Source: Vitrella brassicaformis CCMP3155 (taxonomy: Eukaryota; Protista; Chromerida). Taken from it: a stretch of 64,000 nucleotides of DNA. Shown piece by piece: positions 55,147 through 60,559 of this stretch (its first letter is position 1; the number at the start of each line of letters is the position of its first letter). The notes under the pieces are model-generated. The model worked only from the letters and a program-made list of their open reading frames with translations. It was not told where the DNA came from and made no database searches. Where the stretch lies: NCBI GenBank assembly GCA_001179505.1, contig CDMY01000821.1, forward strand, positions 124,001 through 188,000. The letters are read 5' to 3'. The translations under genes were made by a program, and so were the position numbers.

Positions 55147-55798
55147 TCAGTGGTGGTGGTGGCCATCACAGGTGGTCGTCTTTGGCCACTGAGGGGCGAA
55201 GTGGTGGTGGGTGGATGGGTCCGCTGTGGGGCACTGGTGGGTGTGGTCCATCGGGCGAAGAGTGGTACAGAACTTATCCCAGTTGACGTCCATGTCGGCC
55301 TTGAGCAGATACATCCACTCGGTGCACTCGAGGCTCTTCTTCAACGACACGTGCAGGCACCTGTGTACAAGAGCAGCAGCAGCAGTGAATGCAGCACCCC
55401 GTCCTTCAGTATGAGCTTGGCGGCTACCTTACCTTCCTCTGTGTCGGTCATCGTCTTCTATCATCCACAGCGAGTCGTCGGGCTTGACGATCTGCGTGAG
55501 ATCCCCACTCACAATCTCATCGCCCTGACAAGCACAGCACACATGTGCGTGGAGATCTCTCGTCCGGATCTCATGCTGACTTTGACGGTGATGCTGATCT
55601 CCCTCGGCTTGATGGTACAGCGGATGTCCTTTGCAGTGATGTCCTCTGCAAGCGGCACCCAGACGCTGACGAAATGCCCCTCCTGCAGGCCAGATCCACA
55701 GCGGGAAACATGCGTCCATGCAGCATGAGCCTGTTCTTGCACGTAACCTGGTCCCATTCGTATCGACGGGCGGATTCCGCATCCGAAATGGCAACCAT
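55147..55798 (-). CDS. NudC/p23-like CS-domain co-chaperone, 4 exons
   Basis: RYEWDQ/EGHFVSVWVPL..TAKDIRCTIKPREISITVK/GDEIVSGDLTQIVKPDDSLWMIED../CLHVSLKK..EWMYLL fits the NudC CS-domain pattern. Confidence 0.82.
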
Positions 55799-55879
55799 CC
55801 CGAACAGAGATCTGCGAGCTAAGTTCTCAAAGGCACAGTTTCACGTGCCCCAGCCACTAAGAATTTTCGGCACGCCGCG

Positions 55880-58785
55880 ATGGAGAATGAGCACGAGAAT
55901 GAGGCTACAGACAAGCGAGAGGCGGCGCAGCCGCATTGCAATGTCAATGCGAAGCGGCATCCGCCGCCCGACGACACGCCCGGTCAACGTGACACCGTCC
56001 ACATCCTTTCAAGAGCGCTGTATCAGCCAAGAGTGCCCAAAGCCGCCAGAGGAAGGGGCGGCACCCAAAGGAGAGTTGACGATTCCGTCCGTTATCCTCC
56101 CAAGCGGCCCATCAGTGTTCCGGCTACTCATGAGCCGTCATCATTGGAGATGATAGAGGGGGAGAGCGGGGGAATAGCCGCTGCAGTGAGATCTCTGAGA
56201 CCAAGAACTGCCCCTGGTATGTATGAGAAATGCCAAGTCCACTCGATTGCGTCTGAAGTTCTGTGCATGCAGGTCAGGTGCGTCGTGATTCACGGCAGCA
56301 GAGGAAGTCGCCGCCGGAGGATATCACGTCCCTGCATGCTCTCTACGGACAGAGAGTGGCACAGCTGCAACGACTGCTCAAGTATAGCATGCAATCGCTC
56401 ACTCACCCACACCAAGGCAACAGACATCCACACAGCTATTCGACTTGCTTTCCGCCGTTTGCATTGGTGGCAGGTCGGCCGAGCGGCGGATACACATGCT
56501 CGAGCACACCAATCGGCTGCTCATTGAAGTGACCGTCGACAAAAGACGACTTAAGGAGACGCCCACGGTCGCAGCTGTCGAAGAGAGCCGAGAAAGTGAA
56601 GACACAATAAGGCATGGACGGCCCAAAGGAGACCGAAGCTACCAGACGATCCGCTTTGTGTTAGTGCAGGCGTGAGAAAGGCCGTCTCGTTGCCATGGGC
56701 GGCAAGTTCCTAAAGCAGGTAGGTCGAGGGCGCCAGATCGGTGGCACATCCATCTACTTGACATCGTCTCTGATGTCTCTGATGGCTTCCTGCGTGCAGC
56801 TTCATTCGATGCGGCAGGATCTGGAGCATATGCGCATGTCGGTCATATCACAGCTGTGGGCGCAGAAGACACTGCTCAATGAGGCCTCAGAAAAGGCCGA
56901 ACAGATATGCGCTCAGCACCAAAGACGACCACGCAGCCGGCGTGAGGACAGACTATCCAGACCAGCATCGCGAAAAGGGCAGCAGGCAGAGACACGTAAG
57001 AACTGAACAGAGTGCTGCGTTGCCGCTAGGGTGTAATATCTGTGCCATGCTGATTAGTTCCAGGCACAGAAGCGGCCCCACAACCTGCCGATGCCACAGT
57101 TGCGCCCCTTCCCCCATCCCCCAAACCCCCCATTGCTGACAGCCGCATTACGACGGTGTGCGTCATTCGGCAGGCCCCCCAGCAGCACACCGACGCCCCT
57201 TCCTCCCATGAGACGTCCCTTACTCTCCCCTCCTTCACCCCCTCCCCACACAGACCGTCCACACCCCTGAGGTTCACCGATCTGCCGCACTCCCGCCGCC
57301 TCTCACCCACGGTGTCCGTCATTACCTCCCCTCTCCTTCGCACGCCCAGACCTGTCGTCCCTGAGGCGGACCGAGCCATAGTGCGGTCACTTGGTGGCGG
57401 CATGATTGAGTGTGTGGCCAGGGGAGGATTCACCAGGAGAGTCTATGGGCCGTTCGATGCTGTCTATACGGAGGAGGGGGGGATTGCTGACACGATTATC
57501 GACCAAATAGGGGCCTGCCCTGCTGCCAAGACCTTGACGGTCGCCACGCTGGCCAGCGACGACAAGACCACTGCGTCCTGCGTGTCGCGCGTTCTGTCAC
57601 GTCTCATTGCGGACGACTCTTCTCACCCGGTCGACGTGTCAATATTCCTTGTACAGACCAAGAACGGGGGAGGGGGCGTCGCCGGGTCAGTTACCGATGT
57701 CTTGGCCAGCTACCTCGGACCGGATGAAGTCACAAGGGGAGAGAGGCGACATTCTCGAGGGCTGTTTGCTTCGACCGAGCACGAGCACGAGAAGAGAGTG
57801 GGGACTGTGCTGCAGGCGCGGCTCCGAGAAAGGGCCCGAAAGAGAGATGAGCCGTACGTGAGAGTAAGGGCAGCCACAAATGATGACGTGAAAAGGCTAA
57901 GACGCATCCTGAGGCACCTTGCCACACAGAGGTCAGAATACAAGCGCTCCAGACGGTGTGTGTGACAATGATCGTGGGTCCGCCTGCTCCGAATTGTTTC
58001 TTGTCTTGTTTGCAGGACAAAGGAGGGCCCCCGCAGCCCATCAGATTCACCGCGGCCCTTTTCGACAGAGCGGCCGCACCTCCGGCAGAGCACGACACGA
58101 GACGCTTTTACTGTCAGCAGCACAACGTCCAGAGGACGCACAAAGGAAGAGACACCGACACATGGTGAGAAGGACACGGGCACTGACGTACAATCTCCCC
58201 TGTACACTCTGCTATTGTTCCACAGACTCGTGTCTTGTCGTCGCTCTCTATCTTTCTCATGCCGATGCTCCCGCTTTGACACCATCCGGTGCACAGGGCA
58301 GCCAGTCGGTCGTGTTCGTCGATTTCCCTAAAGCAGCATCGCCCGCCATCCACGCGCTCGCCCTGGCCTGCCAAGAAACCAACGACCCTGGCGAGAGGGA
58401 GACGCACAACGGCTCTATGTTCTTCCCCCAGCCGCCCCCACCAGCACCGCTGAAAGCCAGGAGGTAGGATGCGCCATACTGGCTGCATACGATCGCTATA
58501 CGATTTGATACATGTCTCTCTCGATGCAGGTCACGCCTGACGCTGTTCCTTCACCACACTTTCGATGCTTTCTCGCCCTCTTCACGCTTTGTGTTTGCCC
58601 TTCCTCTGTCACCGTCTAGCACCGATGCGGCGACCAGCCAGAGGCGGCTGGCAGCTCTTGCCGCAATTGGCCAGAGGCAACGGGTCGTGCCCAACAGGGG
58701 AGGTGCGACCTTCCGGAGGAGCACAATGCTTGCTGAGTGTCGTCACCCCTGCACGATGAATTGGGTTCGCACGCCAGACAGTTAG
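55880..58785 (+). CDS. Coiled-coil protein with a C-terminal degenerate kinesin motor-homology domain, multi-exon
   Basis: Coiled-coil segments, then RVYGPFDAVY..DTII, VSIFLVQ, VRAATNDDVKRL..TQRS, VVFVDF, and SRLTLFLHHTF..SRFVFALPLSPSSTDAATSQRRLAALAAI. The last segment matches kinesin SKLTxLLxxSL..SKTxMxxxISP..ETxxSLxFA. Nucleotide-binding motifs are degenerate. Confidence 0.62.
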
Positions 58786-58994
58786 ACAGACAGACGCATA
58801 CATGCACGTGACCGGTAGCTCATTGGAGCTTTTGTCGTGCTTTCGACAGCCATGTCGTGCGATGGATCCATCCATGGAGGCGCGTGTGTCCGTGTGCGTG
58901 TGTTTGACATTCATGCCTGCGAGTGAGAGGGAAAGCAGTGGACATGCACTGGCAGTGGGGGTTAGATGGGGGCCAATTCAAAGACGCCGAGACG

Positions 58995-60559
58995 ATGAAC
59001 CTGGATCAGTCGCACGGCGGCGCATTGAGCAAGTCTGCCCTGCAAGGTGGCGGCCTCACAGTCACGGATACGCACAGGCCGTCTGCCCTTGAGGCCATCG
59101 AAGCGCAACTCAAGGGAGTTGTGAGCAACAAGCAATTCCAAGCCCTTGCGCGTGGCTCTGCCAGTGCATCGTGGTGTGCCCCTCTGCCTCCTTAGGCTTC
59201 ATGCAGCCGCATTTTGCTCGCGTGCACCTTGGTGGAAGCCACCAAGACAGCACAGAGACTCGAGAGTGAGCTGAGGGTGACAAGAATGCGCAAGGGATAT
59301 GTCCTGTCTGTACTGTTGGTGTGTGTGCAGGCGTGTTGTCGGCATGGATGCAGTCAGAGGCTCAGTCTGGCGAGGTGACCGGCCTGCTCCTCGTATACGC
59401 CTCACAGCAGGCGGCCCTCTTGTTCGCAGAGGTAGGTAGAGTGAGTGTATGACAGACACACAGACAGATGGAGACACTCATCTGTCTGCCTGTCTGCCTG
59501 TCTGTTGTTCTGTAGGGCCTCACTGAGCAGCTGTTCCGCCTGTTGACCAAGGTTGGCGACATGCAGACACAATCAGAGGTAGCAAGCGCAATGGCCGACC
59601 AGACCAATACTTGCAAAGAAAAGCTCGTCTGTTTTGCCTTTGTCGGCTCAACGACAACAGGGCAGCCCTGGTGAGGGGGTAGCGAATGTCCGCATCCTCC
59701 AATTCACTGAGCTGGTGGGTGAGACCAGCCAGCCTCAGGGAGGCCATCATGTCTGTTGTGGTCTCTCTCACTCAGCACGGCGTTCGTCTGCTCCCCTTCT
59801 GGACCTCATTCCACGTGCCGCCGCCAAAGGGTAACCACGGCACTGACACCACAAACCACGCACTTACTGCTGCCACGATTGTCTACTACCTGGTGTTGCC
59901 CTCAGCGGCAGGTGGCGCGCAGGCTGGGGGAGACACGGGCGACGCGGAGACACCGGTCCTGGAAAAGGTATGTACGCTGCAGGTGTGTTTTCGTGCCCGA
60001 ATCGTGCATGGGGAGACATCCAGGGTGTCCTGCTCGTGTGCAGGTGTGGGAGATGTACCGTAATCTGCTCATCCTTGGCAGCAAACTCGGCGGCGAAACG
60101 GTCAGTCACGTACAAGGAGAGACGACCGCGGACATACGAGGCGAATCTGGTCAATTTCTTGCCTGCCTGCCTGCAGAAACACAGCGCTGCTCATGTGCTG
60201 AAAAACGTGAGATGAACACGGCCGGCAGAGGAACGTTTTGTGTGCGAATGTGTGTGTGTGTGTGTTTGTGTGTGGGCGGCTGGGCTGCGTCAGACCCCGC
60301 TGCTGCCGCCTGGTGAGGTGTTGGGCGAGCTGCTGAGCGGCGAGAACCACGAGGATGCCCTCATGTCCTACGAAGGTGGGCAATGGCCTCACTACACCCA
60401 TGGCTGGATGGGATGGACGCAGCTGTCTCCTCTGCCTTTCTGTCTGTGGACTGGATGCTTCTATGCGTGTGTTGTGTGTCTATAATAGAGTTTGCTGACG
60501 TGTTCATGTCTCCGTTCACACTCGTGCTCGAGAGTGAGCTGCTGTGGCCCATGTTGTGA
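58995..60559 (+). CDS. DYBLUP/MOT7/TEX47 (C7orf62) BLUF-like axonemal dynein-associated protein, multi-exon
   Basis: SRILLAC, GEVTGLLLVY, VANVRILQF, PLLPPGEVL and C-terminal FMSPFTLVLESELLWPML*. These parallel TEX47 EGVTGLLLIY and YNRPIHITLDSEVVWP. Confidence 0.78.

What the first reader, a model, noticed from the sequence alone, without database searches (positions are those of the whole stretch)
57375..58785. Catalytically dead kinesin motor-homology domain behind a coiled coil (Vik1/Cik1-like architecture)
Seen in sequence: the C-terminal domain keeps kinesin structural segments in the right order (FDxVY-like, VSIFLVQ, VxVxxxxDV, VDF, SRLTLFL..LSPSSTDAATSQRRLAALA). The P-loop position reads TLASDDKT (57546-57569) instead of GxTGSGKT, no SSRSH switch I is visible, and switch II reads DFPKAA instead of DLAGSE. 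Established: yeast Vik1/Cik1 are coiled-coil proteins with a nucleotide-free motor-homology domain that heterodimerise with kinesin-14 Kar3. Inference: this may be an independent alveolate example of a non-motor kinesin-14 partner.
Basis: partly seen in the sequence, partly recalled or inferred. Interest (0 to 1): 0.7.

Follow-up and report, generated by a model that had tools for sequence, protein, structure and literature searches.

The report
Cryptic dead kinesin-like domain in Vitrella

Summary
The motifs sit at the stated coordinates in an expressed, spliced gene: 9 exons, 55880-58785, + strand, 779 aa, identical to the uncharacterised Vitrella brassicaformis protein CEM34461.1.

No standard sequence tool sees a kinesin. 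Pfam, PDB sequences and hhalign are blank or non-significant, and phmmer against 1.84 billion proteins finds only the protein itself.

Two separate lines still point to kinesin, on non-overlapping halves and in the right order:
- **C-terminal half (beta6 to alpha6):** it scores against a kinesin profile better than at least 999 of 1000 shuffles. Swapped-half controls do not.
- **N-terminal half:** by language-model features and by the ESM Atlas's own model, it matches only kinesin motor clusters (TM 0.55-0.58, 145-163 residues).

No P-loop, switch I or switch II survives, and the introns are too short to hide alternative exons. A 49-aa S/T/P/R-rich insert, encoded exactly by exon 7, replaces switch I.

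The Vik1/Cik1 analogy is only partly supported. The heptad-like helices are short and interrupted. They lie about 125 proline-rich residues away from the domain. No partner could be tested.

The scan has noted other degenerate kinesins in this genome on other DNA, but not this locus. I read it as a new, extreme member of a known kind (pseudo-kinesins).

The parts
55880..58785 (+). Whole gene, 9 exons, 779 codons plus stop. Exons: E1 55880-56216, E2 56273-56381, E3 56474-56611, E4 56670-56718, E5 56800-56995, E6 57064-57931, E7 58016-58164, E8 58226-58463, E9 58530-58785.
   Evidence: GT..AG joints in RNA-type contigs X1 and X7. The model has no internal stop and equals P0122 = CEM34461.1, Vitrella brassicaformis CCMP3155. 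Intron 56996-57063 is not covered by RNA contigs; it is supported only by the annotation and the reading frame.
56329..56922 (+). Two heptad-like helical stretches (P0122 about 128-175 and 205-254), interrupted, spanning exons 2-5. This is the putative short coiled coil.
   Evidence: Crude heptad score with proline-free 28-residue windows. No dedicated coiled-coil predictor was available.
56923..57374 (+). Basic, then proline/serine-rich linker of about 125 residues (P0122 about 255-380) between the helices and the domain.
   Evidence: Composition (19% Pro in residues 311-378); sequence.
57375..57931 (+). N-terminal half of the motor-homology domain (exon 6 part). Elements in order: beta1-like AIVRSL, FDAVY, alpha1-like helix, beta3-like TLTVATLA, P-loop remnant TLASDDKT (57546-57569), alpha2-like helix, beta4-like VDVSIFLVQ, a charged helical region, and alpha3-like NDDVKRLRRILRHLATQR.
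   Evidence: ESM Atlas search on P0122 372-566: by features the best named clusters are all kinesin (0.90-0.88); by the Atlas's own model, TM 0.55-0.58 over 145-163 residues, with every row a kinesin cluster. The order of secondary structure in the AF2 single-sequence model fits. Sequence alone is not significant.
57510..57533 (+). GACPAAKT, a near-miss to Walker A (G-x4-A-K-T) and an alternative register for the P-loop.
Evidence: MAFFT puts it under GQTGSGKT. It is the only G..K[ST] string in the protein.
58016..58164 (+). Exon 7: a 49-residue S/T/P/R-rich insert (P0001 178-226) at the place of switch I / loop 9.
   Evidence: Joints on both sides in RNA contigs; composition 69% S/T/R/K/E/D/Q and 8% hydrophobic; no SSRSH-like string.
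58226..58463 (+). Exon 8. Elements in order: beta6-like SCLVVALYLSH, beta7 plus switch II remnant SVVFVDFPKAA (DFPKAA 58321-58338), a shortened alpha4-like SPAIHALALACQET, and a proline-rich loop-12-like stretch.
   Evidence: Joints; alignment blocks. The distance from D of DFPKAA to the alpha4-like I is 9 residues, against about 22 in the kinesins of alignment A2.
58459..58683 (+). alpha5-beta8-alpha6 signature: RRSRLTLFLHHTF, RFVFALPLSPSS, DAATSQRRLAALAAIGQRQR (crosses intron 58464-58529).
   Evidence: This is the best-scoring block against the kinesin profile: 19.8 + 3.7 + 7.9 bits. hhalign picks the same stretch. C-terminal half test: 0-1 of 1000 shuffles reach the real score.
58684..58785 (+). 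33-residue C-terminal tail and stop codon. The domain sits at the very C-terminus of the protein.

Best explanation
The gene encodes a Vitrella-specific 779-aa protein. It has a disordered N-terminus, two short heptad-like helices, a proline-rich linker of about 125 residues and a C-terminal domain of about 370 residues. That domain is a heavily eroded kinesin motor.

The core strands and helices are still recognisable, in kinesin order and roughly kinesin spacing. The P-loop, switch I and switch II are gone, and loop 11 and the start of alpha4 are cut by about 13 residues. The domain therefore almost certainly cannot bind or hydrolyse ATP or generate force (inferred from sequence).

It most likely serves as a passive module. 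It could be a microtubule- or tubulin-contacting foothold, or a protein-binding scaffold. The two basic positions of the loop 12 / alpha5 RxxK motif are kept as R305 and R308. The helices would bring the domain to its site by self-association or by pairing with another protein. The S/T/P-rich exon-7 insert, with its Ser-Pro sites, is a plausible phosphoregulatory loop (inferred).

Shown here: gene structure, transcription and splicing, absence of the motifs, and absence of detectable relatives. Probable: kinesin descent. Inferred only: any binding function.
For: - **Gene model and expression:**
- **Kinesin descent, C-terminal half:** against a profile of 120 kinesins, z = 3.6-5.8 and 0-1 of 1000 shuffles reach the real score. 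Swapped-half controls are mostly at chance; one of the four settings, the N-terminal half against the C-terminal profile with cheap gaps, gives 21-47 of 1000. The top blocks fall on alpha5, beta8, beta7 and FDxVF, in order. hhalign chooses the same alpha5-beta8-alpha6 alignment.
- **Kinesin descent, N-terminal half:** residues 372-566 exclude that block. In the ESM Atlas they match only kinesin clusters, by features (0.90-0.88) and by the Atlas model (TM 0.55-0.58, 145-163 aligned).
- **Whole domain:** the best named family by features is kinesin, at 0.87.
- **Secondary structure:** the order in the MSA-free AF2 model is strand-strand-helix-strand-helix-strand...helix, as in a kinesin N-terminal half.
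- **Motif loss:**
- **No hidden exons:** intron lengths of 61-84 nt and a single splice form.
Against: - Pfam gives no kinesin hit at E <= 10, for the exons or for the spliced protein.
- No PDB sequence hit at E <= 10.
- hhalign probability is below 1%, P = 0.065.
- HMMER local score is -2.1 bits, reached by about 2% of shuffles.
- The N-terminal half is not above chance by sequence.
- The AF2 single-sequence model is unusable (pLDDT 36.8). Its fold searches give only generic alpha/beta hits.
- The kinesin-alignment-guided AF2 model is circular and still poor: pLDDT 51, Foldseek TM 0.25-0.35 to kinesins, E >= 0.012.
- The Atlas features and the Atlas model come from one language model, so they count as one source. 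The Atlas model of the whole protein is mediocre (pTM 0.43, pLDDT 0.50).
- The restriction to halves was chosen after I had seen the alignment.
- With no orthologue, purifying selection cannot be shown.
Confidence: 0.7

Rival explanations
1. The protein is a Vik1/Cik1-like non-catalytic second head. It would heterodimerise through its helices with a Vitrella kinesin-14 (or another kinesin) and give that motor a microtubule foothold.
For: The order of parts is the same: helices at the N-terminus, and a nucleotide-free kinesin-like domain at the extreme C-terminus, as in kinesin-14, Vik1 and Cik1 (PMC4338441). The basic residues of the loop 12 / alpha5 motif are retained. Earlier scan notes report a normal kinesin-14 elsewhere in this genome (not checked here).
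Against: The heptad-like stretches are short (about 45 residues each) and interrupted. About 125 proline-rich residues separate them from the domain, so there is no neck that would hold two heads side by side. Loop 11 and alpha4, the main microtubule contacts of kinesins, are truncated. The structural neighbours are not kinesin-14-specific. No partner was tested.
Confidence: 0.12
2. Not kinesin-derived. The domain is an unrelated, lineage-specific alpha/beta domain, or largely disordered protein, whose few kinesin-like strings are chance. They were picked out because the reader was looking for resemblances.
For: All standard homology tools are blank. The N-terminal half shows no sequence signal. 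The MSA-free AF2 model hits only generic Rossmann-like folds. Language-model scores below 0.9 are leads only, and a third of shuffled proteins get ten same-family hits. A scan of very many windows will turn up resemblances at p of about 0.01.
Against: Two methods applied to two non-overlapping halves name the same family, in the right order. The swap controls are mostly at chance. Every one of the nearest Atlas models is a kinesin rather than a mix of P-loop or Rossmann folds.
Confidence: 0.13
3. A kinesin paralogue in free decay. It is still transcribed and spliced, but it is no longer under selection and has no function.
For: It has no detectable relative among 1.84 billion representative proteins, nor among proteins of similar length to the whole protein. 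The divergence is extreme. Coverage in RNA contigs is low next to both neighbouring genes (depth of contigs is a poor measure). Earlier notes report many degenerate kinesins in this genome.
Against: 779 codons stay open across nine exons, and all eight introns keep usable splice sites and reading phase. The spliced form appears in assemblies from two studies. The hydrophobic core strands and the alpha5-beta8-alpha6 block are the parts that survive, which looks like selection for the fold.
Confidence: 0.05

Closest known systems
Vik1 and Cik1 of budding yeast (non-catalytic motor-homology-domain partners of the kinesin-14 Kar3; PMC4338441, PMC3384419)
   Same: A C-terminal globular domain of kinesin type without a nucleotide site, placed after helical or coiled-coil sequence at the N-terminal side. 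Non-motor by sequence.
   Different: Here the helices are short and interrupted, and a proline-rich linker of about 125 residues separates them from the domain. No kinesin partner is known. Kinesin sequence motifs are still partly visible in the C-terminal half. A 49-residue insert replaces switch I. The protein is lineage-restricted to Vitrella. Heterodimerisation and microtubule binding are untested.
KIN-B of Trypanosoma brucei (predicted inactive kinesin that pairs with KIN-A by coiled coil in the chromosomal passenger complex; PMC10987093)
   Same: An independent case of a kinesin-like protein with a non-functional motor domain that works as a scaffold through its helical parts.
   Different: KIN-B has its inactive motor at the N-terminus and the coiled coil at the C-terminus, which is the reverse order. 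It is conserved across kinetoplastids and has a defined partner and complex. None of this is known here.
Other degenerate kinesins of Vitrella brassicaformis noted by this scan on other DNA (for example s1-221828, s1-231098)
   Same: Same genome, expressed genes, and loss of the nucleotide motifs in a kinesin scaffold.
   Different: By their descriptions, those are recognisable members of kinesin families (kinesin-14, kinesin-3). This one falls below every Pfam/HMMER threshold and has no detectable relative. I did not examine those loci.

Membership tests
Kinesin motor domain (Pfam PF00225) | Match to the family profile above the curated threshold | tested here: not met
   No kinesin hit at E <= 10 for the exons, for P0001 or for P0122. 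Own HMM of 120 kinesins with filters off: -2.1 bits.
Kinesin motor domain (Pfam PF00225) | Kinesin core fold (central sheet flanked by helices, in kinesin order) | tested here: inconclusive
   N-terminal half: the Atlas model gives TM 0.55-0.58 to kinesin clusters only. The C-terminal half was not tested by an independent structure. The AF2 single-sequence model is unusable. The alignment-guided model is circular and poor.
Kinesin motor domain (Pfam PF00225) | P-loop GQTxxGK[ST] | tested here: not met
   No [AG]xxxxGK[ST] and no GK[ST] anywhere in the protein. The candidates are TLASDDKT and GACPAAKT.
Kinesin motor domain (Pfam PF00225) | Switch I SSRSH | tested here: not met
   No such string. 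The place is taken by the exon-7 insert and ends in ...TPTHD.
Kinesin motor domain (Pfam PF00225) | Switch II DxxGxE (DLAGSE) | tested here: not met
   The site reads DFPKAA. Only the Asp is kept.
Kinesin motor domain (Pfam PF00225) | Non-catalytic signature alpha5-beta8-alpha6 (R-x-S-K-L-T-x-L-L ... I-S-P ... T-L-x-x-L) | tested here: met
   RRSRLTLFLHHTF, FSPSSRFVFA and PLSPSSTDAATS score 19.8 + 3.7 + 7.9 bits. C-terminal half: 0-1 of 1000 shuffles reach the real score. hhalign gives the same alignment.
Vik1/Cik1-type motor-homology-domain proteins | C-terminal kinesin-fold domain without a nucleotide-binding site | tested here: inconclusive
   Absence of the motifs is shown. The fold is probable but not proven.
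Vik1/Cik1-type motor-homology-domain proteins | Long coiled coil that runs up to the domain (neck) and carries the two heads together | tested here: not met
   There are only two heptad-like stretches of about 45 residues each. They end about 125 proline-rich residues before the domain (crude score, no dedicated predictor).
Vik1/Cik1-type motor-homology-domain proteins | Heterodimer with a catalytic kinesin-14 | not testable with these tools
   No multimer prediction and no interaction data.
Vik1/Cik1-type motor-homology-domain proteins | Microtubule binding by the non-catalytic domain | not testable with these tools
   Sequence hints only. R305 and R308 are kept in loop 12 / alpha5, while loop 11 and alpha4 are shortened.
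KIN-B-type inactive kinesin | N-terminal inactive motor followed by a C-terminal coiled coil that pairs with an active kinesin | tested here: not met
   The domain order is the reverse here. The KIN-B layout is taken from PMC10987093.

The most novel reading that the evidence does not exclude
Vitrella has evolved, independently of fungi and kinetoplastids, a non-catalytic kinesin-derived head. Through its short helices it would pair with a real kinesin (kinesin-14 or another) and act as a regulated microtubule foothold, with the Ser-Pro-rich exon-7 insert as the switch. This would be a third, alveolate origin of the motor plus pseudo-motor design.
Probability: 0.1. Interest if true: 0.7.

Novelty: new member of a known kind. 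Interest (0 to 1): 0.4.

Why it matters
Dead kinesin heads are known from a few well-studied cases (Vik1/Cik1, KIN-B), where they turn out to be key parts of mitotic machines.

This case shows how far such a domain can erode and still be traceable. It lies below every routine homology threshold and is annotated as 'uncharacterized'. It was recovered only by combining a half-by-half profile test with language-model structure.

That suggests kinesin censuses of chromerids and other alveolates based on Pfam undercount pseudo-motors.

The biological weight is limited for now. The protein is an orphan of one species, and nothing is known about its partners, location or function.

Tried and rejected
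- **Pfam on exons and on the spliced protein:** nothing.
- **phmmer against PDB sequences at E <= 10:** nothing.
- **Searches for relatives:** phmmer against 1.84 billion representatives found only the protein itself. The word-seeded search with the whole 779-aa protein found nothing. So no alignment of relatives could be built.
- **AF2 without an alignment:** pLDDT 36.8. Foldseek against PDB gave non-significant G-alpha and other alpha/beta hits. The shape search in the Atlas gave generic Rossmann-like rows at TM 0.2-0.3. I take these as uninformative.
- **hhalign -glob:** gave a meaningless end alignment.
- **AF2 guided by a MAFFT alignment with 42 kinesins:** all 50 best PDB hits are kinesins, but this is circular. 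The model is also poor (pLDDT 51, TM 0.25-0.35), so I give it no weight.
- **Kinesin profile:** it was built from relatives of a giant-virus kinesin found by a DNA pattern. It is biased towards kinesin-13, so no assignment to a kinesin family was attempted.
- **Alternative exons restoring the motifs:** considered and rejected. The introns are 56-92 nt, there is one splice form, and no canonical motif occurs in any + strand frame.
- **GACPAAKT as a working P-loop:** considered and rejected. The second glycine is missing, and both switches are gone in any case.
- **Joined sequences:** every call to a search or folding tool used exon references or the stored ids P0001 and P0122. Local scripts also scored P0001, taken from the stored file, against the kinesin profile. 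Exons were joined inside scripts only to check length, identity to the stored proteins and coordinates, plus a local pattern scan for motif strings in the joined protein. No typed joined sequence was sent to any search.
Full report
**What is there**

The window has 55-61% G+C and short spliceosomal introns. I laid public runs on 55300-59300. Two DNA assemblies (X2, X4) are colinear with the window. Two others (X1, X7) hold contigs that skip short GT..AG stretches, so they contain spliced RNA.

The joints, one loose end and the reading frames give a nine-exon gene on the + strand:
- E1 55880-56216
- E2 56273-56381
- E3 56474-56611
- E4 56670-56718
- E5 56800-56995
- E6 57064-57931
- E7 58016-58164
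- E8 58226-58463
- E9 58530-58785

The intron 56612-56669 is GC-AG. The intron 56996-57063 has no RNA contig over it.

The model has 779 codons and no internal stop. A word-seeded protein search with exon 6 returned P0001, a 390-aa product of a 1666-base JGI contig. P0001 is exactly the spliced product of the last part of exon 6 plus exons 7-9. The other member of its cluster, P0122, is the 779-aa NCBI protein CEM34461.1 / UniRef A0A0G4GV09 of Vitrella brassicaformis CCMP3155, named only 'unnamed/uncharacterized'. P0122 equals my model letter for letter.

**The observation**

TLASDDKT is exactly at 57546-57569, and DFPKAA is at 58321-58338. I add three points:
- Exon 8 begins at 58226, not further downstream. 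It adds SCLVVALYLSH, which lies where kinesin beta6 follows switch I.
- Exon 7 encodes exactly a 49-residue S/T/P/R-rich stretch at the place of switch I.
MAFFT aligns it to GQTGSGKT.

In either register there is no Walker A motif. The protein has no GK[ST], no SSRSH-like string and no DxxGxE. None is hidden in another + strand frame of the locus. The introns inside the domain are 84, 61 and 66 nt, and only one splice form is seen. The 'alternative exon' refutation therefore fails.

**Is it a kinesin?**

Routine tools say nothing:
- Pfam gives no kinesin hit at E <= 10 for any exon, for P0001 or for P0122.
- PDB sequences give no hit at E <= 10.
- phmmer against 1.84 billion representative proteins finds only the query.
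- The whole-protein word search finds nothing.

To get a kinesin profile by reference, I found a giant-virus kinesin by a back-translated LVDLAGSER pattern. I collected 120 relatives, all carrying PF00225, and aligned them.

Results against that profile:
- hhalign of P0001 returns one local alignment, exactly alpha5-beta8-alpha6, at P = 0.065.
- HMMER with filters off gives -2.1 bits, a score reached by about 2% of shuffles.
- My own Smith-Waterman of P0001 against the profile's log-odds, with shuffles and window-shuffles as the null, gives z = 2.0-3.4. Between 2 and 22 of 500 shuffles reach the real score, depending on gap costs and scoring.
- The traceback is colinear. Its best blocks are RRSRLTLFLHHTF on RgskLTkiLkdsF (19.8 bits), FDAVY on FdkvF (12.4), GSQSVVFVD on the strand before DLAGSE (8.7) and PLSPSSTDAATS on tiSPekknvedt (7.9).

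I then split the test into halves:
- The C-terminal half (P0001 225-360) against the matching profile columns gives z = 3.6-5.8, and 0-1 of 1000 shuffles reach it.
- The N-terminal half gives z = 0.5-1.3.
- The swapped-half controls are at chance in three of four settings. The fourth, the N-terminal half against the C-terminal profile with cheap gaps, gives 21-47 of 1000.
- This split was chosen after I had seen the alignment, so the p-value is somewhat flattering.

The N-terminal half has a different kind of support:
- The ESM Atlas search of the whole domain by language-model features ranks kinesin as the best named family, at 0.87.
- For P0122 372-566 alone, a stretch that excludes the alpha5-beta8 block, the best named clusters are all kinesin motors (0.90, 0.89, 0.88).
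- The Atlas holds its own model of this protein. That model's residues 372-566 superpose on six kinesin cluster representatives at TM 0.55-0.58 over 145-163 residues. Every family set among the 30 nearest models includes PF00225.

Features and model come from one language model and count as one source. The whole-protein model is mediocre (pTM 0.43). Even so, a generic alpha/beta fold would be expected to draw a mix of P-loop and Rossmann families, and my poor AF2 model does exactly that.

Two methods on two non-overlapping halves therefore name the same family in the right order. I put kinesin descent at about 0.8.

**What did not help**

AF2 without an alignment gave pLDDT 36.8. AF2 with a kinesin alignment gave pLDDT 51 and only weak kinesin hits (TM 0.25-0.35, E >= 0.012). 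That result is circular, so I give it no weight.

**Anatomy by alignment (inference)**

In order along the domain:
- beta1-like AIVRSL
- FDAVY
- alpha1-like helix
- beta3-like TLTVATLA with the P-loop remnant
- alpha2-like helix, apparently without loop 5
- beta4-like VDVSIFLVQ..SVTDVL
- a charged helical stretch where loop 8 / beta5 should be
- alpha3-like NDDVKRLRRILRHLATQR
- the exon-7 insert in place of switch I
- beta6-like SCLVVALYLSH
- beta7 plus DFPKAA
- an alpha4 reached after 9 residues instead of about 22
- a proline-rich loop 12
- alpha5 with both basic positions kept (R305, R308)
- beta8 LSPSS
- alpha6
- 33 more residues to the C-terminus

**The rest of the protein**

A crude heptad score finds two proline-free heptad-like stretches, residues about 128-175 and 205-254. 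A basic and then proline-rich linker follows, up to the domain at about residue 381.

This is the order of parts in kinesin-14, Vik1 and Cik1. It is not their geometry. In Cik1-Kar3 a coiled coil of about 61 nm carries two closely spaced heads at one end (PMC4338441). Another known case, trypanosome KIN-B, is a predicted inactive motor that pairs with KIN-A by coiled coil, but its motor is N-terminal (PMC10987093).

**Most likely mechanism**

The domain is a non-catalytic kinesin relic used as a binding module. The helices would bring it to its site, by self-association or by pairing with another protein. The Ser-Pro-rich insert is a candidate regulatory loop. Only the loss of catalysis is well grounded. 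Binding to microtubules and pairing with a kinesin are inferences.

**Rivals**

- The specific Vik1-like partner reading: 0.12.
- Chance resemblance in an unrelated domain: 0.13.
- A decaying paralogue: 0.05.

**Context from the scan**

Earlier notes list eight other degenerate or odd kinesins in this genome on other DNA. Two of them have follow-ups. Those notes named the organism before I confirmed it. None of them covers this locus, and I did not examine them.

**Novelty and score**

Pseudo-kinesins are a known kind. This one is a new and unusually eroded member, invisible to Pfam, in an orphan protein of one species. No paper in the library mentions its accession numbers. Interest is moderate, 0.4. 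It would rise if a kinesin partner were found.

Noticed in passing
window 56612-56669: A GC-AG intron in this gene. A loose end of an RNA contig places the joint there, ambiguous by 2 nt, and GC..AG is the only canonical reading. The annotated protein agrees.
   Followed up: partly
window 58016-58164: Exon 7 encodes exactly the 49-residue S/T/P/R-rich insert that replaces switch I, so the eroded element is a discrete exon. It contains RSPSDSPRP-type Ser-Pro sites.
   Followed up: partly
Which of the two corresponds to the ancestral P-loop is unresolved.
   Followed up: partly
window 55150-55800, - strand: Head-to-head neighbouring gene with three confirmed introns (CT..AC joints) and far higher RNA-contig depth than this gene. 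One exon gives a weak CS-domain hit (E = 0.01, below the cut-off). Its start lies roughly 100 bases from this gene's ATG at 55880.
   Followed up: partly
window 58650-59266: RNA contigs of both RNA-type runs start inside this gene's last exon (58650 and 58708). They run on into the downstream + strand gene, which has an intron at 59121-59195, with a jump in depth. The 3' end of this gene and the 5' end of the next therefore overlap or abut.
   Followed up: no
P0001 (window 57402-58782, spliced): The two best ESM Atlas feature hits of the domain are unnamed clusters of 468 and 455 aa (scores 0.88 and 0.87), ranked above the first kinesin cluster. They might be other cryptic relatives. No ids were given, so I could not follow them.
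   Followed up: no
L001 3442-4548 (IMG/VR giant-virus MAG contig): A giant-virus contig encodes a compact 368-aa kinesin with intact GQTGSGKT, SSRSH and DLAGSE. Its many relatives are mostly from metagenomes, and some are labelled kinesin-2/24 (kinesin-13-like). I used it only as a seed for the profile.
   Followed up: no
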